Part shown: piece by piece, positions 53,686-60,800 of the stretch
How the letters are laid out: every line of letters begins with the position of its first letter
Numbering within the stretch: the first letter of the stretch is position 1
Assembly: GCF_000142905.1 (NCBI RefSeq)
Contig: NW_013657667.1
Span: 316,801-380,800, forward strand
Direction: 5' to 3'
DNA length: 64,000 nucleotides
Origin: Thecamonas trahens ATCC 50062
Taxonomy: Eukaryota > Protista > Apusomonadida
Program-made: the position numbers and the translations under genes
The notes under the pieces: generated by a model
Databases searched by the model: none
What the model was told of the DNA's origin: nothing
The model's input: the letters and a program-made list of their open reading frames with translations, nothing else

Positions 53686-53920
53686 CCAATGTCTCAAGAA
53701 AGCAAAGAGATGCTCACCTAGCTAGGTGCGGCATCGGGCATGCCGTGGTGATGGGAACTCCAGAGCCTTCCGAATTCGCCTCTATTCGAACACGAACAGC
53801 ATGCGGCACGTGGGACCACACAACGCCCTTGGTAGCCCCCTTGCACCCAGCCAACACTTAACTCCCTCCCCCCCCCCCCCTTCCCCCCCCCCCCCCCTCC
53901 CCCTTATCCCCCAGTCATCC

Positions 53921-55226
53921 ATGTCCGGACTATTGAAGAAGGCGCGGGCTGGGCGCAAGGCGGTGCAGGCCAAGGTCGGGGCGCGAGTGACCAAGCGACG
54001 AGAGCAGCTGCACCAGAAGCGTGTGGCGGCGACGCAACGTGTGCGGGGGAAGCGAGCGGACGGACGACTGGGCAAGACTGAGTTGGAGGCACGAATGTAT
54101 GAGGCTGCACGCTATGATCAGTATGCGCTTGCTGCTTTGCTCAAGGACCGACTGGCGGCGGTGCGCGAGGCCAAGGCCGCTCTTGCCGATGCTCGCCTGG
54201 CCAAGGACTTTACCACAGCCGAGGCTCTTGATGCCAAGCTCATTCAGCTCACAGAGCGCGAGCCATTCGAGGCCGAGGTCGAGAGCCTATACGCTGCATG
54301 GGCAGAGACCCATCCGCATCGCGCCGCGCGGCTGGAGGAGCACAAACGGATGCGCGATGGTGGGCCGGCGTATGCCGGCAATCCGCGGAAGGACGGCGGA
54401 AAGGGGAGGCTGGGCTCAGACTCGGGCTCGGGCTCGAACTCGGGAAGCAGCAGCTCATCTTCCAGCTCAGGAGGGAGCGACGATGGCGGCGCGGATGCAA
54501 ATGCAGGACCATCACTGGTGGCAGGCATCTCGCATCGGTTGCACATCCGCAAGGTGTCGATGGTGCACCGGCTGCGCGGGAAGCGGAAGGACGGCGGGCT
54601 GGGCAAGACTGAGCTGGAAGCGATGGCGTACGAGGCCGAGTCCAAGGGCGAGTACGCTGTGGCAGCGCTGCTGCTCTCGCGGTGTCGGGCTCTGCATGAT
54701 GCCAAGCTCGCCAAGAAGAAGGCTGTGGTCAACGAGAACTTTGCCGAGGCCGAGGTCCAGACCAAGATCATCAACTCGCTCCGGGCCCGCGATCCGTTTA
54801 TGGCCGAAGTGGAAGCCATGCGCAAGGACCAAGCGGTGTCAGACTCGGCTCGGTCAGACGCGGCGGCCGCTGATGATTCGAGCACTCAGTCAACAAGCAG
54901 TCCAGGCTCCAACGACGGTGTCAACAACATGCCACGGCGCAACTCGGTGGTCGAGCGGCGCGGCTCGGTGGTCGAGCACTTTGACTCGAACTCGTCGTCA
55001 CCGATTGTGGTCTCGCACATTACGCCATCCCAGGCTGCTGCTGGGCGCTCGCCGTACGCCGACTACAAGGCTGAGCAAGATGCGGCATGGCAGGCAGACG
55101 GCAAGTGTCGACGACAACTCAATGGCATCGCCGATTCCGGGCCCTCCTCGGCCAGTCGACAACATGGCCATCATGTTTGACTCGGACTCGTCGTACGAAG
55201 CGCTGACCATGGACGCATTTCTTTAG
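53921..55226 (+). CDS. Hypothetical protein with a duplicated module of about 80 aa containing UVR-like helical hairpins; probable frameshift near 55093
   Basis: RGKR.DG.LGKTELEA..YEA...Y..AALL...R.PF.AEVE occurs twice; the shifted frame ends ...YEALTMDAFL*. Confidence 0.65.
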
Positions 55227-55232
55227 TGGAAC

Positions 55233-57350
55233 TCACCAGGCCTTGGCCGAGTACTCGACCGGCGTGTTAGGGGCTGGAGAGAGGGTCTCACCAAGGGTAT
55301 GATACGCGGCGGCGGCGTCGGCGACGTCGTCTCGAGTGTCGTGTAGGTCGTCAAGCTCGACATATGAAGGGAGCCAATGAAGGAAAGCGTTCGCGTCGAG
55401 CGCAGCATCGAACCGCCTGAGACGACTGAGAAGCGTTGCGCCGATGCCCGAGTGAGCAGCCAGGAGCGTGACCGCCGCTGGGAGCTTCTTCGACGTTGCC
55501 GAGTGGACAAGGAGTGCAACCGAGGTGCCTCGAGCCATGGCCCATGAAGGATCGGCGTGGAGCCGACACTGGGAGCCGATAGGATCCAGCAGTGACCGGT
55601 GCACGTCGTGGGTGGCACGCGACGAGAGACCCGAGGCATAGACTGCAGCAGAGAGGAGCATGTCCGTGTCGAGGCGGCGCGGATCGCTCAGCGCGGTGGC
55701 AAGTGAGGACGACGGCGAGAAGACACGCGGGATTAGCTGCTCGATGTGTGGGTGTCGCTTGCCAAGCTGCGCATAATGAACCGAGTACAGCGGAAGCCGC
55801 TGATGCGAGGTTCCGGACCGGAGCGAGAGGTCGCGCCACTGGATCGGTGGTGCGTTGATGGCGACCGAGGCGAGGGCGCGACCGACGACCCGGGCGGCTG
55901 CCGCTTTGGACGCGTTGCGACCGACTCTTCGGAGGACAACGTCTGCATCTGTGACAAGAGCAAAGTCGGTGGCTGCAGCAATGAGGGAGAGCTCGTGAAG
56001 TGCAAGGACGTGGGCGTGCGGCAGCGGAGCGTGAGCAAGATGGCTGGCCGGCGGCAGAGTGGCGGCGACGACGACCGACGGCGAAATCTCGTCGGTGACT
56101 TGATTAAAGAGAGGCAGAAAGGCAGCACACGAGCCAAGCTCGTAGGTGACCAGCACGGAGTCAAGACCATGGTCACCATGCTTCTCAAGAGCGGCGCGGC
56201 AGGCATCGACAGCAGCGTCGACAGAGTCAGTGCCTTTGGCGCAAACCGTCAGCGGTGCGCTGGAAAAGTCGTTGGCCCAGTACGCTGACTCGACGAGTGG
56301 ATCGGCAGAGTGACAGAAGCCGTGGGAAGAGGACGACGGATTGAGGAGTGTATGCATGCGGTTGTAGGCGGCATCGCCAGCAACGGCGCCAAACTCGCCA
56401 ACCCGCAGCGCCAGGACTGAGCGCGCCGCCACAGTGGCGAGCGGCTCATCGCGGCGGGCACCCAGACGCATGGCATCAAGCGGAAGCTGGGGCACAGGAT
56501 CAAACCAGTTGTCTGCACGCGAGGTGGTGGTCCGCGGGCGGACTTTGTGGCGGAGCGAACGGCGCGAGGCAAGAGCCAGTGCCGAGCCCGGGCGGACCAG
56601 GGCCGGCACAGCCGCCGGGCCCGACTCGGACTGCTCCAGAGGAGATGCAAAGGCACGATGCCAAGCGTCGAGCTCGGGGTCGGTCGACGATGAGAACGAG
56701 AGCTCTTCGGCAAAGGTGGAGGCGCTCGAGTCGTCGGCGTCTTGGTCCGAGTCGGCCGACTCGGCCATGGGGTCGCGCCAAGGCGGCGGTGGGACGTCTC
56801 GATCTGTGTCCAGCAGCGGCGAGTCCATCAGCGGACCCGTAGCCGGGACAAAACCAGCGGCTGTAGCTGTGCGGGCAGCAGCGCGAGACGATGTGCGGGA
56901 GAACGGGCGTGGCGGAAGATCGCCACGGACAGCAGTATCCGGTGACGATGGGCGCCGTGACGATGGAGCATGTCCCAACAGCGGAGCTGAGAGGTAGGGT
57001 GAGGTCGAGGCCGGGCGAGTTGCAAGAAGGCGTGAGTGCGGGCGTGCGGCAGTGATCGGAGAGCAAGCGGCGTTGGTGCGAGAGCGAGGCTGGCGGCGCG
57101 ATGTAGCGGCAGCAGTAGCTGGACGATGGGAGCGAGCAATAGGCGAGCGAGGACCAGCAGCCGAAGCTGGGCGCGGCGGGAGCTTGCGGGTTGAGTAGGG
57201 AGTGGGAGCAGCGAGAGAGAAGATCGGCGGAGGCAGAGGAGCCCGTGACCAGCCCTTGGGCACGGCTGAGTCAGCAGCGTCTGCCGTGGCTCTCGCCTGG
57301 CAGCACGTAGCACGAGTGGTGTACTTGCCGCAGAGCACACACCTGCGCAT
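55233..57350 (-). CDS. Highly divergent tubulin-superfamily protein with a CxxC...CC N-terminus and a disordered linker of about 300 aa
   Basis: Colinear tubulin-like segments: VLALRVGEFG, YWAND, VDACRAALE, VLVTYELG, RLPLY, VTLLAAHSGI, FDAALDANAFLHWL...DLHDTRDDV....Y. Confidence 0.7.
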   Translation of the reverse strand: MRRCVLCGKYTTRATCCQARATADAADSAVPKGWSRAPLPPPIFSLAAPTPYSTRKLPPRPASAAGPRSPIARSHRPATAAATSRRQPRSRTNAACSPITAARPHSRLLATRPASTSPYLSAPLLGHAPSSRRPSSPDTAVRGDLPPRPFSRTSSRAAARTATAAGFVPATGPLMDSPLLDTDRDVPPPPWRDPMAESADSDQDADDSSASTFAEELSFSSSTDPELDAWHRAFASPLEQSESGPAAVPALVRPGSALALASRRSLRHKVRPRTTTSRADNWFDPVPQLPLDAMRLGARRDEPLATVAARSVLALRVGEFGAVAGDAAYNRMHTLLNPSSSSHGFCHSADPLVESAYWANDFSSAPLTVCAKGTDSVDAAVDACRAALEKHGDHGLDSVLVTYELGSCAAFLPLFNQVTDEISPSVVVAATLPPASHLAHAPLPHAHVLALHELSLIAAATDFALVTDADVVLRRVGRNASKAAAARVVGRALASVAINAPPIQWRDLSLRSGTSHQRLPLYSVHYAQLGKRHPHIEQLIPRVFSPSSSLATALSDPRRLDTDMLLSAAVYASGLSSRATHDVHRSLLDPIGSQCRLHADPSWAMARGTSVALLVHSATSKKLPAAVTLLAAHSGIGATLLSRLRRFDAALDANAFLHWLPSYVELDDLHDTRDDVADAAAAYHTLGETLSPAPNTPVEYSAKAW

Positions 57351-57534
57351 AGCCCGGGCAGAAGGTGATGAGGGGGAGGTGGGGGGGATTGTGGGTGTGG
57401 TGTGGGTGTGTGGGGCGGGGAGGGGGGGGATGGGGTGGGGTGGGTAGTGTGTGGGGTGCGGAGGGCGAGAGGGAGAGTACGCGTGCGGTGATACGGCTTG
57501 GCGGCATGGTTTCAACGCCATCAGCATGTGGAGA

Positions 57535-57700
57535 TGGGGATGGGGATGGGGATGGGGATGGCGATGGGCGTGGTGGTGGTGTGCATAGCGGTGTCCACTG
57601 CAGGTACATGTGGTTGCGGTGGCAGATGCGGTTGCGGTGGCAGATGCGGCTGCGGTTGCGGTTGCGGTTGCGGTTGTGGTTGCGGTTGCGGTTGCGGTGG
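57535..57700. repeat. (GGGGAT)n and (GGTTGC)n simple repeats in a divergent intergenic region
   Basis: Read directly. Confidence 0.85.
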
Positions 57701-57824
57701 CAGGTGCGGGCCGACGACTGGCCTTACCCACCACCGCCACCAGCCCCCCCCCCCCAGCTCATGACGGCCACGGCCAAACGGGGCAACACCCCTCTCTCTC
57801 TCTCATCACCATCGAGAGAGAGAC

Positions 57825-60800
57825 ATGGCAGAGAGGATGTTGGACCGAACACCCATGGCTACAGCTCGGATCCTGGCCCGTCTCCCGGCTGTGGTCTCAT
57901 CGCCGCATGCCCGTCGGGTGGTGGCGAGGGCATTGGGACCACGGCTGGCGGCATCACGGGCGCGGGCAGGGGCTCAGGCACGGGCAAAGGCAGCACAAAG
58001 TCGGCGGCGACAAAGGCGACGGGGAAGAACGGGCAGAGGATCTTGGTCAGCGAGCTCTAGGTCCGGAAGCGGGAGCAGCTCTTACTCGACAAGCTCGAGC
58101 TATGAGTCGGCGTCGGTGTCGTTGTCGGCGAGCTCGGCCGCAACCGGCAGCACCTTTGGCGCCATGCTCAACGAGACTGTTGTCGAGTGGGCCAACACGG
58201 ATGTGACGGTGGTGGAGAAGGCTTTCACCAAAGATGGTGATAACGTTGCTCTGCTGGGAGGAGACAGTCCGCCGACAGCGAGCCCGCGCCGCCGGATTCC
58301 TAACAGCGCCATGCCAGCACCGCATGCCGTATTTGTGGCGCCGTGCAAGTCACAGGAGCGATTTGCTGCCTCGATTGTCGGCGCGAGGCAGCAACGAGCC
58401 AAGGGGTTGGCACTGTCGAGCATGCGTGAGCCTGAGCCGCCTGCAGAGGCGCGGCGCAGGTTGGTGGGCGCCGGAGGACTGGCCTCACCGCGGTACCGGT
58501 CGCTGACGCTCCGGCGCGAGCCGGTGCGGCTGCGGCCGGTGGAGGACGAGACACGACATGATGCGGCAGTTGTTGGACGGATTTGCAACGATGTCCAGGT
58601 GGCGCAGGCGGCGCAGGCGTTGGAAGATGCGGCGCACTCGATTCTGGTCGAGCGGCAGAAGAAGATCTTGGTCCGCGCTGAGCGGCGCAAGCAGTTCTGG
58701 TCGATTCTCGCCAACCGCAATCGTGCAGCGTCGGATCGAACCACGGCCGAGGTGGAGCTGCTGTATGACATGCTTCGCGGTGTTCGCGGGCTGATGTCGT
58801 TCAACAAGGCTGTGCTCCGGAAGCTCTGCCGGGTCTGCACCCTTGTCCGGTTTGAGGACTGGTCGGTTGTGTTCAAACAAGGCGATGTGCCCGAGTCATG
58901 GTACGTCGTTCTCACCGGAGCTGTTGATGTCGTGGTGGCACAGAAGAAGAACTTTGGCTCTGCCGCTGAGCTAGGGAGTCGTGGCAGCAACGGCAGCAAG
59001 ACCGAGTCGGACTCGGACTCTGGCTCGGGCTCGGGCTCGGGCAGAGACCTCGAAGCGCTGCAGATTACTGGCTCGGACGTGCTGGGAAAGACGGCGTACG
59101 AGCTTGCCCTTCACCGGGCAAAGCGCAGGTTCAAGATATCGCTCTTTGACATTGCGCTCTTTGTCATTTTCAAGAAGCGGCTGATGGTGGCGGCGGCGGC
59201 CAAGGCTGAGTATGCGCAGCGAATGGCGAAGGACCCGCGGATGGCCCACCAGGTCGGCTCGCTGTCGATGGGCAAACGGACGGGAGTCCGGTTTGACGTC
59301 CGCACCGGAACCTGGATCAAGAGCCGGCTTTGGACGCTGCTCTGCGATGCGACCCGTAACGGCTTTGGTCGCGTCCTCCGCATCATCAACCGGCTCGAGC
59401 GGGTCAAAGCGTACGAGAGTCACAAACTTCGCTCGCGACGCAACCGCAAACTCTTCTTCCGTCGCTTCAAGATGGGCGCCAACTTTACCCGTGGAGGCGC
59501 GGTAGCGCCATCCAAACTCAAGGCCGCGAGCGGGAAGAGCAGTGAGAAAATACGTGGCAAGGGCAAGGGCAAGCGCTCGGCAAGCTCGGCATCAGCCAGT
59601 GAGCTGGTCAGTTCTGCGGCCGCGTCCGTCGGTTCTGGCGGCTCTGTCGACGGTGGAGACTCCCAGCCAGCCACAGAGGTTCATGAGCTCGGGCGCACGC
59701 GCCCTCCTGCGCGGATCACGCTCCTGAAAGCGGCAACAACGCGCGGCCGTGCGCCGACGCTTCAGAGTCAGCGATCGGTGCGAGCGTTGCTGTCGGAAAA
59801 GCAGGCGCGAAATCTAGAGGCGCGGCAGTCGCTGACGATGGTGACCAAGATGCGGTTGCTGCAGCGAAAAGAGTCGACGCGGCGCAAGCTGCTGACGCGT
59901 GAGGCACGGATCAACGCGCAGTCGATGACAAACTTGGCGGTGTCGACCTCGAGCGCAGGCTTGAGCACCGGTGCGTCAATGGCGTCGATTAGCTCGGGAG
60001 GCGCGCCGGTGGTGCGTCGGCCATCGATGGTGACAATGGTGTGGAGCACGCGGCAGGGCCGGAGGGCGTCTGTAGCGCCGCCGCCGGGAGGTGTGCGCTC
60101 ACGTCTGGAGGAGCGGCAGAAGATGCAGCGGGAGCAGCTGCGGAAGCAGCAGGACATCGAGCAGGCACAGTCGCGGTTTGCACGGATCAAGCACCGCGAG
60201 TCGGAGGCTTCGATTCGGGCTGACTCAATTTCGAGCTCGCGCGGGCTGCTGGCGTCAAGCTCGATGCTTATGCCGTCTGGACCGTCGGTGGAGGGGCTTG
60301 CAGCGTCGGCCGGAGCACGCTCGATCTCGGTCTCGCGATCGGACCTGCTCAAGCACGGTGAGGCTGTGCTGGCGCAGCCGTCGCTCGATGACATCCGGAG
60401 AATACGTGGCGGTGGCGGTGGCAGTGGGTGCTCGAGCGCGTCGGATGCGAGCTCACTGCCGTCAGAGCCATCGTATCCGTCAGACTCTTCGGACTCGTTT
60501 GATGACAATACGTCGTCATCACGGTTGGGCTACGATGAAGGCCGGCGTCGGCGGCAGCGGCAGCGGCGGCGGCGGCGGACAACACACGAGTCAAGCGGGC
60601 AAGGCGATACGACGAGTGCCGGTGTGACGCCACGTACACCACGTACACCACGGACACCGCGCGGAGGCACTCGCCGTGGTCCGCGCGCGCGAAAGATGAG
60701 CGTTATGGTCGAGACCGAGGCTGTGACTGGATGGGGCGAAACGCTGGTGCTTGCCGAGGGTGCCGACGGCGCTGTGCCGCGGGCGGACCTAGGCACAGCG

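What the first reader, a model, noticed from the sequence alone, without database searches (positions are those of the whole stretch)
55233..57350. Degenerate tubulin (probable pseudo-GTPase) with a Cys-rich cap and long disordered N-terminus
Seen: the last ~395 aa (56423-55233) follow tubulin in order. SVLALRVGEFGAVAG ~ EIVxLQVGQCGNQIG; YWAND ~ NNWAKG; VDAAVDACRAALE...LDSVLVTYELG ~ VDSVLDVVRKEAE...LQGFQLTHSLG; QRLPLYSVHYAQL ~ PRLHFFMPGFAPL; EQLIPRVFSPSSSLA ~ ELTxxxFxPxNxMV; AVTLLAAHSGI...RFDAALDANAFLHWL...DDLHDTRDDVADAAAAY ~ alpha-tubulin AVCMLSNTTAI...KFDLMYAKRAFVHWY...GEFSEAREDMAALEKDY. The signature GGGTGSG loop is replaced by GSCAAF, the region corresponding to the RAxxxDLEP segment appears deleted, and there is no acidic tail. 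About 310 aa of Pro/Ser/Arg-rich sequence starting MRRCVLCGKYTTRATCC precede it. Known: alpha to zeta tubulins keep the glycine loop for GTP binding and start near residue 1. Inference: an intact ORF encoding a nucleotide-free tubulin-fold protein, possibly a new tubulin class acting as a lattice cap or a centriole/flagellar-root adaptor.
Basis: partly seen in the sequence, partly recalled or inferred. Interest (0 to 1): 0.85.

Follow-up and report, generated by a model that had tools for sequence, protein, structure and literature searches.

The report
Divergent GTP-motif-less tubulin paralogue, apusomonad
A marine flagellate (Thecamonas trahens, according to earlier notes of this scan) has a real seventh tubulin-like gene that keeps the tubulin fold but has lost every GTP-binding signature and gained a long N-terminal arm with a cysteine-rich tip; it probably acts as a passive tubulin-shaped adaptor, not as a building block of microtubules.

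Summary
Window 55233-57350 (minus strand) is an intact 705-codon ORF. Its last 396 residues are a true but very remote tubulin homologue:
- A two-sequence profile against the genome's own six tubulins gives HHalign probability 98.6 %, E 4e-15, over 375 columns. Shuffled and reversed controls score 12-19 against 88.
- All 78 PDB sequence hits are tubulins.
- The MSA-free ESM Atlas model superposes on beta-tubulin at TM 0.77-0.78 over about 353 residues.

No Pfam tubulin, Misato or FtsZ model reaches it. The T1, T3 and T4 (GGGTGSG) loops and the guanine-contact residues of H6/H7 are replaced or deleted.

The genome separately carries alpha, beta, gamma, three further canonical tubulins, one Misato and two FtsZ. 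This gene is therefore an extra paralogue, absent from the published apusozoan count of six.

One full-length homologue exists, in Tara Oceans marine contigs. It shares the Cys-rich N-terminal cap, a second linear motif, the degenerate glycine loop and the C-terminal aromatic end. Its population variants show 11 synonymous and 0 non-synonymous changes in the tubulin-like domain, which indicates purifying selection.

The function (nucleotide-independent adaptor or cap) is inferred, not shown. Expression in Thecamonas is not established. Earlier scan notes do not cover this gene.

The parts
55233..57350 (-). Whole coding sequence: 705 codons plus TGA stop at 55233-55235. Single open frame, no intron needed.
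   Evidence: Full-length homologue L026:227-2176 (649 aa), 37 % identical end to end.
57300..57350 (-). N-terminal Cys-rich cap, residues 1-17 (M-R-R-C-x-L-C-x-K-Y-T-x-R-x-T-C-C). Four cysteines in a basic context. Candidate S-acylation or metal-binding anchor (inferred).
   Evidence: 13 of 17 positions are identical in the Tara homologue, all four Cys included. Unique in the genome. No Pfam hit.
57204..57266 (-). Conserved proline motif, residues 29-49 (A-V-P-x-G-W-S-R-x-P-L-P-P-P-I-F-S).
   Evidence: Invariant columns A29-P49 in alignment A1.
56601..57203 (-). Low-complexity P/S/R/A/T-rich linker, residues 50-250. Variable in length; the homologue lacks about 90 of these residues.
   Evidence: Composition. 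Gaps in A1. All 5 non-synonymous polymorphisms of the Tara variants lie upstream of the tubulin-like domain, 2 of them in the corresponding stretch.
56493..56600 (-). Conserved linear motif just before the domain, residues 251-286 (L-V-R-P-G-S-A-L-A ... K-V-x-P ... S-R-A-x-x-W-F-x-P-V).
   Evidence: 21 of 36 positions are invariant between the two members. Unique in the genome.
55236..56423 (-). Tubulin-like domain, residues 310-705 (396 aa). The complete tubulin fold, with a shortened N-terminal nucleotide-binding half.
   Evidence: HHalign Prob 98.65 %, E 4.1e-15. PDB profile search: 78 hits, the 60 listed all tubulins, best E 0.0047. ESM Atlas TM 0.77-0.78 over 353 residues. Homology-informed AF2 model pTM 0.75, Foldseek E 5e-15 to tubulins.
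56118..56138 (-). Degenerate T4 'tubulin signature' position: L-G-S-C-A-A-F where tubulins have G-G-G-T-G-S-G, and three residues shorter.
   Evidence: The Tara homologue has L-G-S-S-E-S-F at the same place.
55830..55853 (-). A-P-P-I-Q-W-R-D, among the best conserved family motifs, aligned with the end of H7 and the T7 loop of tubulin.
   Evidence: A-P-P-x-Q-W-R-D in both members. Position. T7-H8 family identity 46 %.
55920..56009 (-). V-L-A-L-H-E-L ... D-x-D-V-V-L-x-R-x-G block, equivalent to T5/H5-S6-H6. The ribose-contact Asn of the tubulin 'D-N-E-A' motif is Ala here and Tyr in the homologue.
   Evidence: H5 family identity 60 %, S6-H6 53 %.
55293..55415 (-). H11-H12 equivalent (R-F-D ... 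A-F-L-H-W ... Y-H-T-L). This is the stretch that single-sequence searches recognise as tubulin.
   Evidence: phmmer against PDB: 7 hits, all tubulins, 6 of them best at this region. Profile search.
55236..55259 (-). Non-acidic C-terminus ending in an aromatic residue (...E-Y-S-A-K-A-W). The homologue ends ...E-H-A-A-R-A-F.
56742..56768 (-). Start of the public 511-aa gene model (P0001, M-A-E-S-A-D...). It is an internal methionine, residue 195 of the protein proposed here.
   Evidence: Conservation upstream of it is shown.

Best explanation
This is a real, single-copy protein-coding gene for a highly divergent, lineage-restricted member of the eukaryotic tubulin superfamily.

Shown:
- The C-terminal 396 residues are homologous to tubulin along the whole fold.
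- The protein is an extra paralogue beside the genome's six canonical tubulins, one Misato and two FtsZ.
- Every sequence signature of GTP binding is replaced or deleted: T1 GQxGNQ, T3 GNNWA, T4 GGGTGSG, the H6 Asn, and the H7 Tyr/Asn. About 45 residues of the N-terminal half are missing.
- The same degenerate architecture, with the same N-terminal Cys-rich cap, a second linear motif and an aromatic C-terminus, is kept in one other marine organism, under purifying selection.

Inferred: the protein cannot work as a GTP-driven polymerising tubulin. It most likely acts as a nucleotide-independent, tubulin-shaped adaptor. The best conserved tubulin surfaces (H5, S6-H6, T7-H8, S7 and the M-loop, then H11-H12) would dock on a microtubule end or lattice, or on another tubulin-family partner. 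The roughly 300-residue flexible arm with its Cys-rich basic tip would tether that module to a membrane or another structure, by S-acylation or by metal binding.
For: Homology:
- HHalign local E 2.1e-11 and global E 4.1e-15, with clean shuffle and reverse controls.
- PDB searches return only tubulins.
- ESM Atlas MSA-free model: TM 0.77-0.78 to beta-tubulin over 353 residues; feature score 0.90 to tubulin/delta clusters.
- An independent MAFFT alignment with six tubulins is colinear.

Extra paralogue:
- Genome inventory.
- Findeisen et al. 2014 (PMC4202323) list exactly 6 tubulins for Apusozoa.
- Tree: the new pair has 100/100 support, sits inside the eukaryotic tubulins (100/100 against FtsZ), and has no supported sister.

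Loss of GTP motifs. All six canonical paralogues keep the loop.

Real gene:
- 705-codon ORF.
- Homologue L026:227-2176 with a conserved cap and motifs.
- Tara variants show 19 synonymous against 5 non-synonymous polymorphic codons overall, and 11 against 0 in the domain.

Interface inference: family identity is 46-62 % in H5, S6-H6, T7-H8, S7 and the M-loop, against 0-20 % in S1-T1-H1, the H1-S2 loop and S3-T3, and 7 % in H10.
Against: - Nucleotide binding was not measured. Non-canonical binding cannot be excluded from sequence.
- Transcription in Thecamonas is not shown. Only short contigs of one run of unknown kind, and one 259-nt contig in an unrelated RNA library, cover parts of the gene.
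- The family has only two members, so per-surface conservation is noisy. The element boundaries used were recalled from memory.
- AF2 with the two family sequences alone gave no usable model (pLDDT 35). The better model used tubulins in its alignment and is not independent evidence.
- The role of the Cys cap is a guess.
Confidence: 0.7

Rival explanations
1. A tubulin mimic or decoy. The tubulin-shaped domain does not bind microtubules. Instead it engages proteins that normally recognise tubulin (folding cofactors or chaperonin, modifying enzymes, motors or MAPs that read H11-H12). [quoted passage not shown]
For: H11-H12, the outer surface read by motors and MAPs, is the stretch most like real tubulins. 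Misato, the only other GTP-loop-less tubulin relative described, works through the chaperone complex (PMC4510148, listed).
Against: There is no sequence relation to Misato. The acidic tail and the terminal EEY used by many tubulin readers are absent. Nothing was tested.
Confidence: 0.15
2. A genuine new polymerising tubulin class that still binds a nucleotide through a rebuilt pocket and forms its own filaments.
For: The full fold is retained. The T7 region and the M-loop, which are used in longitudinal and lateral polymer contacts, are among the best conserved parts.
Against: T1, T3, T4 and the base and ribose contacts are all lost, and they also differ between the two family members. The S2-S3 region is largely deleted and unmodelled.
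Confidence: 0.08
3. A decaying tubulin pseudogene, or a chance ORF in GC-rich DNA, with no function.
For: Extreme divergence. No Pfam hit. No proof of transcription. Only two members among about 15 billion proteins.
Against: A 705-codon open frame, whereas the other frames give at most about 190 codons. The architecture, cap and motifs are conserved in a second organism at 30-37 % identity. There are 11 synonymous and 0 non-synonymous polymorphisms in the domain.
Confidence: 0.04
4. The ordinary orthologue of a known class (Misato/DML1, delta, epsilon or zeta) that was merely misread.
For: Weakly best single-sequence scores to delta-tubulin. ESM features are nearest to delta clusters. Highest MAFFT identity is to delta, 21 %.
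Against: The genome has separate canonical copies of three non-alpha/beta/gamma tubulins and a Misato, matching the published count of one each for Apusozoa. There is no supported sister relation.
Confidence: 0.03

Closest known systems
Eukaryotic tubulins alpha to zeta (Pfam PF00091 + PF03953)
   Same: Same fold along the whole domain, S1 to H12 in the same order. Eukaryote-type H11-H12 helices. Branches inside the eukaryotic tubulins and away from FtsZ.
   Different: No GTP-binding signatures. About 45 residues shorter in the N-terminal half. No acidic tail. A 309-residue N-terminal extension. Below every Pfam threshold. Belongs to none of the six classes.
Delta-tubulin
   Same: Nominally the nearest class: phmmer E 3e-6 in a six-sequence database, HHalign single-sequence probability 36 %, ESM feature neighbours. 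Like delta and zeta, it has a degenerate T7/M-loop region.
   Different: The Thecamonas delta-tubulin keeps A-G-G-T-G-S-G and G-Q-A-G-N-Q. There are no shared insertions or deletions and no tree support.
Misato / DML1
   Same: A eukaryotic tubulin-superfamily protein whose glycine loop is degenerate and which is not a microtubule building block.
   Different: No detectable sequence relation (HHalign Prob 0.2 %). No PF10644 or PF14881 match. The genome has its own Misato at G000:C25.
Gamma-tubulin as a microtubule end-capping tubulin
   Same: Conceptual parallel only: a non-lattice tubulin paralogue that binds an end of alpha/beta protofilaments.
   Different: Gamma-tubulin binds GTP and keeps all the loops. 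A capping role for the new protein is untested.

Membership tests
Tubulin/FtsZ superfamily (fold level) | Colinear homology over the N-terminal nucleotide-binding-type domain, core helix H7 and the intermediate domain | tested here: met
   HHalign global Prob 98.65 %, E 4.1e-15, 375 columns. Controls clean. ESM Atlas TM 0.77-0.78 over 353 residues.
Eukaryotic tubulin family (alpha-zeta) | C-terminal helices H11-H12 of eukaryotic type; grouping with eukaryotic tubulins and not with FtsZ | tested here: met
   Six of the seven single-sequence PDB matches are best at H11-H12, as are the listed profile matches. In the tree the clade of 6 tubulins plus the new pair is 100/100 against FtsZ. HHalign against FtsZ finds nothing.
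Eukaryotic tubulin family (alpha-zeta) | T4 signature loop (G/A/S)-G-G-T-G-S-G | tested here: not met
   L-G-S-C-A-A-F in the window and L-G-S-S-E-S-F in the homologue, three residues shorter. All six canonical paralogues keep it.
Eukaryotic tubulin family (alpha-zeta) | Other nucleotide contacts: T1 G-Q-x-G-N-Q, T3 G-N-N-W-A, H6 Asn of D-N-E-A, H7 Tyr and Asn | tested here: not met
   T1 is G-E-F-G-A-V and is not conserved in the homologue. T3 is deleted in both alignments. The H6 Asn is Ala/Tyr, the H7 Tyr is Lys/Leu, and the H7 Asn is Ala/Ser.
Eukaryotic tubulin family (alpha-zeta) | Score above Pfam gathering thresholds for PF00091 and PF03953 | tested here: not met
   No Pfam family at E <= 10 apart from one chance hit, and none in the homologue. 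The genome-wide six-frame searches with both models do not touch this locus.
Eukaryotic tubulin family (alpha-zeta) | Placement in one of the six classes | tested here: inconclusive
   Unresolved polytomy with one species per class. Only a weak lean to delta.
Eukaryotic tubulin family (alpha-zeta) | GTP binding and GTP-dependent polymerisation | not testable with these tools
   Needs biochemistry. Sequence argues against it.
Misato / DML1 | Match to Misat_Tub_SegII (PF10644) and Tubulin_3 (PF14881) | tested here: not met
   No hit at this locus. The hits lie at G000:C25. HHalign against that Misato gives Prob 0.2 %.
FtsZ | Homology to FtsZ closer than to tubulin | tested here: not met
   HHalign Prob 0.1 % against the two Thecamonas FtsZ.

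The most novel reading that the evidence does not exclude
A previously undescribed class of eukaryotic tubulin-superfamily protein, a 'pseudo-tubulin'. It has given up the nucleotide altogether and works as a tethered, tubulin-shaped cap or adaptor. Its conserved T7/M-loop side would dock on the exposed face of a microtubule end or on a centriolar tubulin. A long flexible arm with an acylated or metal-binding Cys tip would anchor it to the membrane or pellicle of apusomonads.
Probability: 0.3. Interest if true: 0.75.

Novelty: new variant of a known kind. Interest (0 to 1): 0.6.

Why it matters
The eukaryotic tubulin superfamily is taken to consist of six classes fixed in the last common ancestor, plus Misato (PMC4202323, PMC9871819). 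A conserved extra paralogue that keeps the fold but has shed the GTPase machinery would be a natural experiment: it shows what a tubulin body can do without its nucleotide switch. It sits in apusomonads, a lineage close to animals and fungi with an unusual microtubule-supported pellicle and proboscis.

It also shows that catalogues based on Pfam and BLAST miss such members. This one is invisible to both tubulin Pfam models, and its public gene model lacks the first 194 residues.

Its restriction to two organisms limits its general reach.

Tried and rejected
Searches for more family members:
- Word-indexed search of 5.8 billion proteins with the window protein found only itself. The same search with the Tara homologue found nothing. 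With the family profile it again found only itself.
- The exhaustive phmmer search of 1.84 billion representatives gave one true relative (P0002). P0003 was checked and is a match to one repeated 36-residue segment. P0004 and P0005, both over 1,900 aa with 7-8 short matched stretches, were not examined.
- Two metagenome scans gave nothing. The automatic peptide patterns produced 600 stretches, none confirmed. My own V-L-A-L-H-E-L ... D-V-V-L pattern produced one bacterial contig, L038, which is a chance match.

Structure and complex:
- AF2 on the two-sequence alignment: pLDDT 35, unusable, not sent to fold search.
- Complex prediction with Thecamonas beta-tubulin was unavailable and nothing was folded. 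No statement about binding rests on it.
- The first ESM Atlas attempt, by reference, found the service busy.

Expression: the look-up of sequencing runs and read laying gave only Logan contigs. They show presence, not transcription.

Organism: looking up the public record of P0001 to confirm the organism returned nothing.

Other checks:
- GC by codon position does not discriminate coding from non-coding here.
- Searches for other Thecamonas proteins with the N-terminal cap or the pre-domain motif found none.
- Synteny with the Tara contig is not seen: the small convergent neighbour has no match in the genome, and the LRR neighbour only hits a large LRR family.
- The alpha- and gamma-tubulin genes are split by introns. 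I used only their large single exons and did not join exons.
Full report
**1. What is there**

The minus strand of window 55233-57350 carries one open frame of 705 codons, starting at an ATG (MRRCVLCGKY...) and ending at a TGA at 55233-55235. Other frames over the same DNA give ORFs of at most about 190 codons. The frame stays open upstream to 57740. That extra stretch is tandem-repeat DNA: 6-nt and 41-nt repeats at 57381-57709. It lies in the 475-bp gap before the divergent gene that starts at 57825.

Residues 1-309 are 63 % P/S/R/A/T. Residues 310-705 have an ordinary globular composition. The last 25 residues hold two acidic residues, so there is no tubulin-type acidic tail. Earlier notes of this scan name the genome as the apusomonad Thecamonas trahens. 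I did not verify that independently (one search returned nothing), but the tubulin inventory below fits the published apusozoan one.

**2. Is the tubulin likeness real?**

Yes.
- Pfam finds nothing.
- A plain phmmer search of the 396-residue C-terminal part against all PDB sequences returns seven hits. All are tubulins, at E 0.2-1.6, and six are best at the H11-H12 region.
- The exhaustive search of 1.84 billion cluster representatives gave one true relative, P0002. It led to Tara Oceans contigs L024-L030.
- On those contigs the homologue is a single ORF. It is complete in L026:227-2176 (649 aa), 30-31 % identical over the last 456 residues and 37 % over the whole pairwise alignment.
- A two-sequence profile of the domain (A2) hits 78 PDB sequences. 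The 60 listed are all tubulins, best E 0.0047.
- HHalign of A2 against an alignment of the six canonical tubulins of this genome gives, in local mode, Prob 97.3 %, E 2.1e-11, 298 columns (query 64-379 on beta-tubulin 109-427).
- In global mode it gives Prob 98.65 %, E 4.1e-15, 375 columns.
- Fifteen column-shuffled versions and the reversed alignment score 12-19 against 88.
- HHalign against the two FtsZ and the Misato of the same genome gives nothing.
- The ESM Atlas holds an MSA-free model of the public 511-aa version (pTM 0.67). Restricted to the domain, it superposes on beta-tubulin models at TM 0.77-0.78 over about 353 residues. Its language-model features are nearest to tubulin/delta-tubulin clusters (0.90, 185 shared features).
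- A MAFFT alignment with the six tubulins, made independently of HHalign, is colinear throughout.

**3. AlphaFold**

With the two family sequences only, the model was useless (pLDDT 35). With the six tubulins added to the alignment it reached pLDDT 67 and pTM 0.75, and Foldseek matched tubulin chains at E about 5e-15, TM 0.66-0.70. That model is homology-informed and is not independent evidence. It is useful mainly for showing that residues 31-66 of the domain (the S2-S3 region) are not modelled.

**4. What has been lost**

The two alignments agree on the following.
- T4 signature G-G-G-T-G-S-G is L-G-S-C-A-A-F in the window (56118-56138) and L-G-S-S-E-S-F in the homologue, three residues shorter.
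- T1 is G-E-F-G-A-V in Thecamonas and is not even conserved in the homologue.
- The S3/T3 segment with G-N-N-W-A is deleted.
- The Asn of D-N-E-A is Ala/Tyr.
- The H7 Tyr and Asn that hold the guanine are Lys/Leu and Ala/Ser.

All six canonical paralogues of the genome keep these motifs.

They set P-L-V-E-S-A-Y-W-A-N opposite R-A-V-L-V-D-L-E-P and delete T3 instead. The net result is the same: about 45 residues are missing from the N-terminal half. Loss of GTP binding is therefore a strong inference from sequence, but it has not been measured.

**5. It is an extra paralogue**

Six-frame searches of the whole assembly with PF00091, PF03953, PF14881 and PF10644 find the following.
- beta (C38), alpha (C1) and gamma (C26).
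- Three more canonical tubulins (C2, C27, C5). I labelled them epsilon, delta and zeta by eye.
- Two FtsZ (C9:571k, C39).
- One Misato (C25).

None of the four models touches this locus (C13). Findeisen et al. 2014 (PMC4202323) list exactly one of each of the six classes for Apusozoa, six in all, after TBLASTN searches aimed at divergent copies. This gene is thus uncatalogued. It is single-copy.

In a small LG+C20 tree the new pair forms a 100/100 clade on a stem of 1.87 substitutions per site. It sits inside the eukaryotic tubulins (100/100 against FtsZ) with no supported sister class. Single-sequence scores lean weakly to delta. A delta-derived duplication is possible but not shown.

**6. 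It is a functional gene**

The homologue shares far more than the fold.
- The start M-R-R-C-x-L-C-x-K-Y-T-x-R-x-T-C-C, 13 of 17 positions identical, all four Cys included.
- A-V-P-x-G-W-S-R-x-P-L-P-P-P-I-F-S.
- A 36-residue motif just before the domain, R-P-G-S-A-L-A ... K-V-x-P ... S-R-A-x-x-W-F-x-P-V.
- The degenerate glycine loop.
- A-P-P-x-Q-W-R-D at the end of H7 and the T7 loop.
- P-x-Y-S-x-x-Y-A-Q-x-G-x-R-H at S7 and the M-loop.
- A C-terminus ending E-(Y/H)-(S/A)-A-(K/R)-A-(W/F).

This fixes the start at 57350. It also shows that the public 511-aa model (P0001, start at 56768) lacks 194 residues.

Seven Tara contigs from different samples differ at 24 codons, 19 synonymous and 5 non-synonymous. 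All five non-synonymous changes lie upstream of the tubulin-like domain. Inside the domain the count is 11 synonymous to 0. If about 30 % of random changes were synonymous, this would have a probability near 2e-6 (my estimate). That is purifying selection on this frame in the relative.

For Thecamonas itself I have only the intact frame. The read tools gave contigs only. Three near-identical pieces (0-1 differences) came from a small run of unknown kind. One 259-nt piece with one difference came from an unrelated subsurface RNA library. Transcription is not shown. L024 comes from JGI sample 3300018932, which I recall to be a Tara metatranscriptome; I could not check this.

**7. How it most likely works (inferred)**

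Without T1, T3 and T4 and the base contacts, a GTP-driven assembly cycle is very unlikely. Family conservation is uneven (element limits recalled from the 1JFF literature).

| Element | Family identity |
|---|---|
| H5, S6-H6, T7-H8, S7, M-loop | 46-62 % |
| H11-H12 | 35-39 % |
| S1-T1-H1, H1-S2 loop, S3-T3 | 0-20 % |
| S2-T2-H2 | 33 % |
| H10 | 7 % |

In tubulin, the T7 side is the face that sits on the nucleotide face of the subunit below, and the M-loop makes lateral contacts. A module that keeps that side, while its own nucleotide side is ruined, could sit on an exposed tubulin face and accept nothing on top of itself. That would make it a cap or terminal adaptor. The long disordered arm and the basic four-Cys tip look like a tether, by S-acylation to a membrane or by metal binding.

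I put about 0.3-0.35 on this mechanism. I put 0.15 on a decoy role towards tubulin-handling proteins and under 0.1 on a rebuilt nucleotide pocket with self-assembly. The planned complex prediction with beta-tubulin could not be run.

**8. Comparison with what is known**

At fold level it is a member of the tubulin superfamily and sits on the eukaryotic tubulin side. It fails the defining sequence features of the alpha-zeta family (signature loop, nucleotide contacts, Pfam thresholds) and of Misato. Papers searched describe only alpha-zeta and Misato as eukaryotic members (PMC4202323, PMC9871819). A search for nucleotide-free tubulin-fold proteins found none.

I rate it a new variant of a known kind. 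It is restricted, as far as about 15 billion public proteins and two metagenome scans show, to Thecamonas and one uncultured marine lineage of similar GC content (62 %). Earlier notes of this scan mention other tubulin-related genes of this genome but not this one.

Noticed in passing
window 56742-57350 (-): The public gene model (P0001, 511 aa) starts at an internal Met (56768). The 194 residues upstream, including the conserved Cys-rich cap, are missing from it.
   Followed up: yes
window 57381-57709: Tandem repeats fill the short gap between this gene and the divergent gene starting at 57825: a 41-nt unit x2, TGGGGA x6.7 and GGTTGC x16. They keep the frame open upstream of the true start. 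Many metagenomic RNA contigs pile up on 57645-57707, probably as a low-complexity artefact.
   Followed up: partly
L005 (G000:C9:34625-34741): A 39-residue stretch with a weak Tubulin_C match (E 0.006-0.03), lying about 150 bp before an assembly gap of 443 N. tblastn with the six tubulins gives only an 18-residue 50 % match to alpha-tubulin. It is probably chance or a relic fragment.
   Followed up: partly
G000:C9:571166-571642 and G000:C39:82361-82975 (L010, L013): The genome carries two FtsZ genes with long N-terminal extensions, presumably mitochondrial division proteins. It also has one Misato, at G000:C25:133475-134383 (L018).
   Followed up: no
L025-L030 (Tara Oceans metagenome contigs): The homologue was split by the gene caller into a 249-aa C-terminal product plus spurious antisense ORFs. 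The real ORF is 649 aa (L026:227-2176). This is why length-filtered protein searches missed it.
   Followed up: yes
window 55714-55970: A 259-nt contig from a 'subsurface metagenome' RNA library matches this gene with one difference. This is an unexpected habitat for a marine flagellate sequence; it could be carry-over or a close relative.
   Followed up: no
window 53726-55180 (+): The convergent neighbour ends only about 50 bp from this gene's stop codon, so the 3' UTRs of the two genes must overlap or be very short.
   Followed up: no
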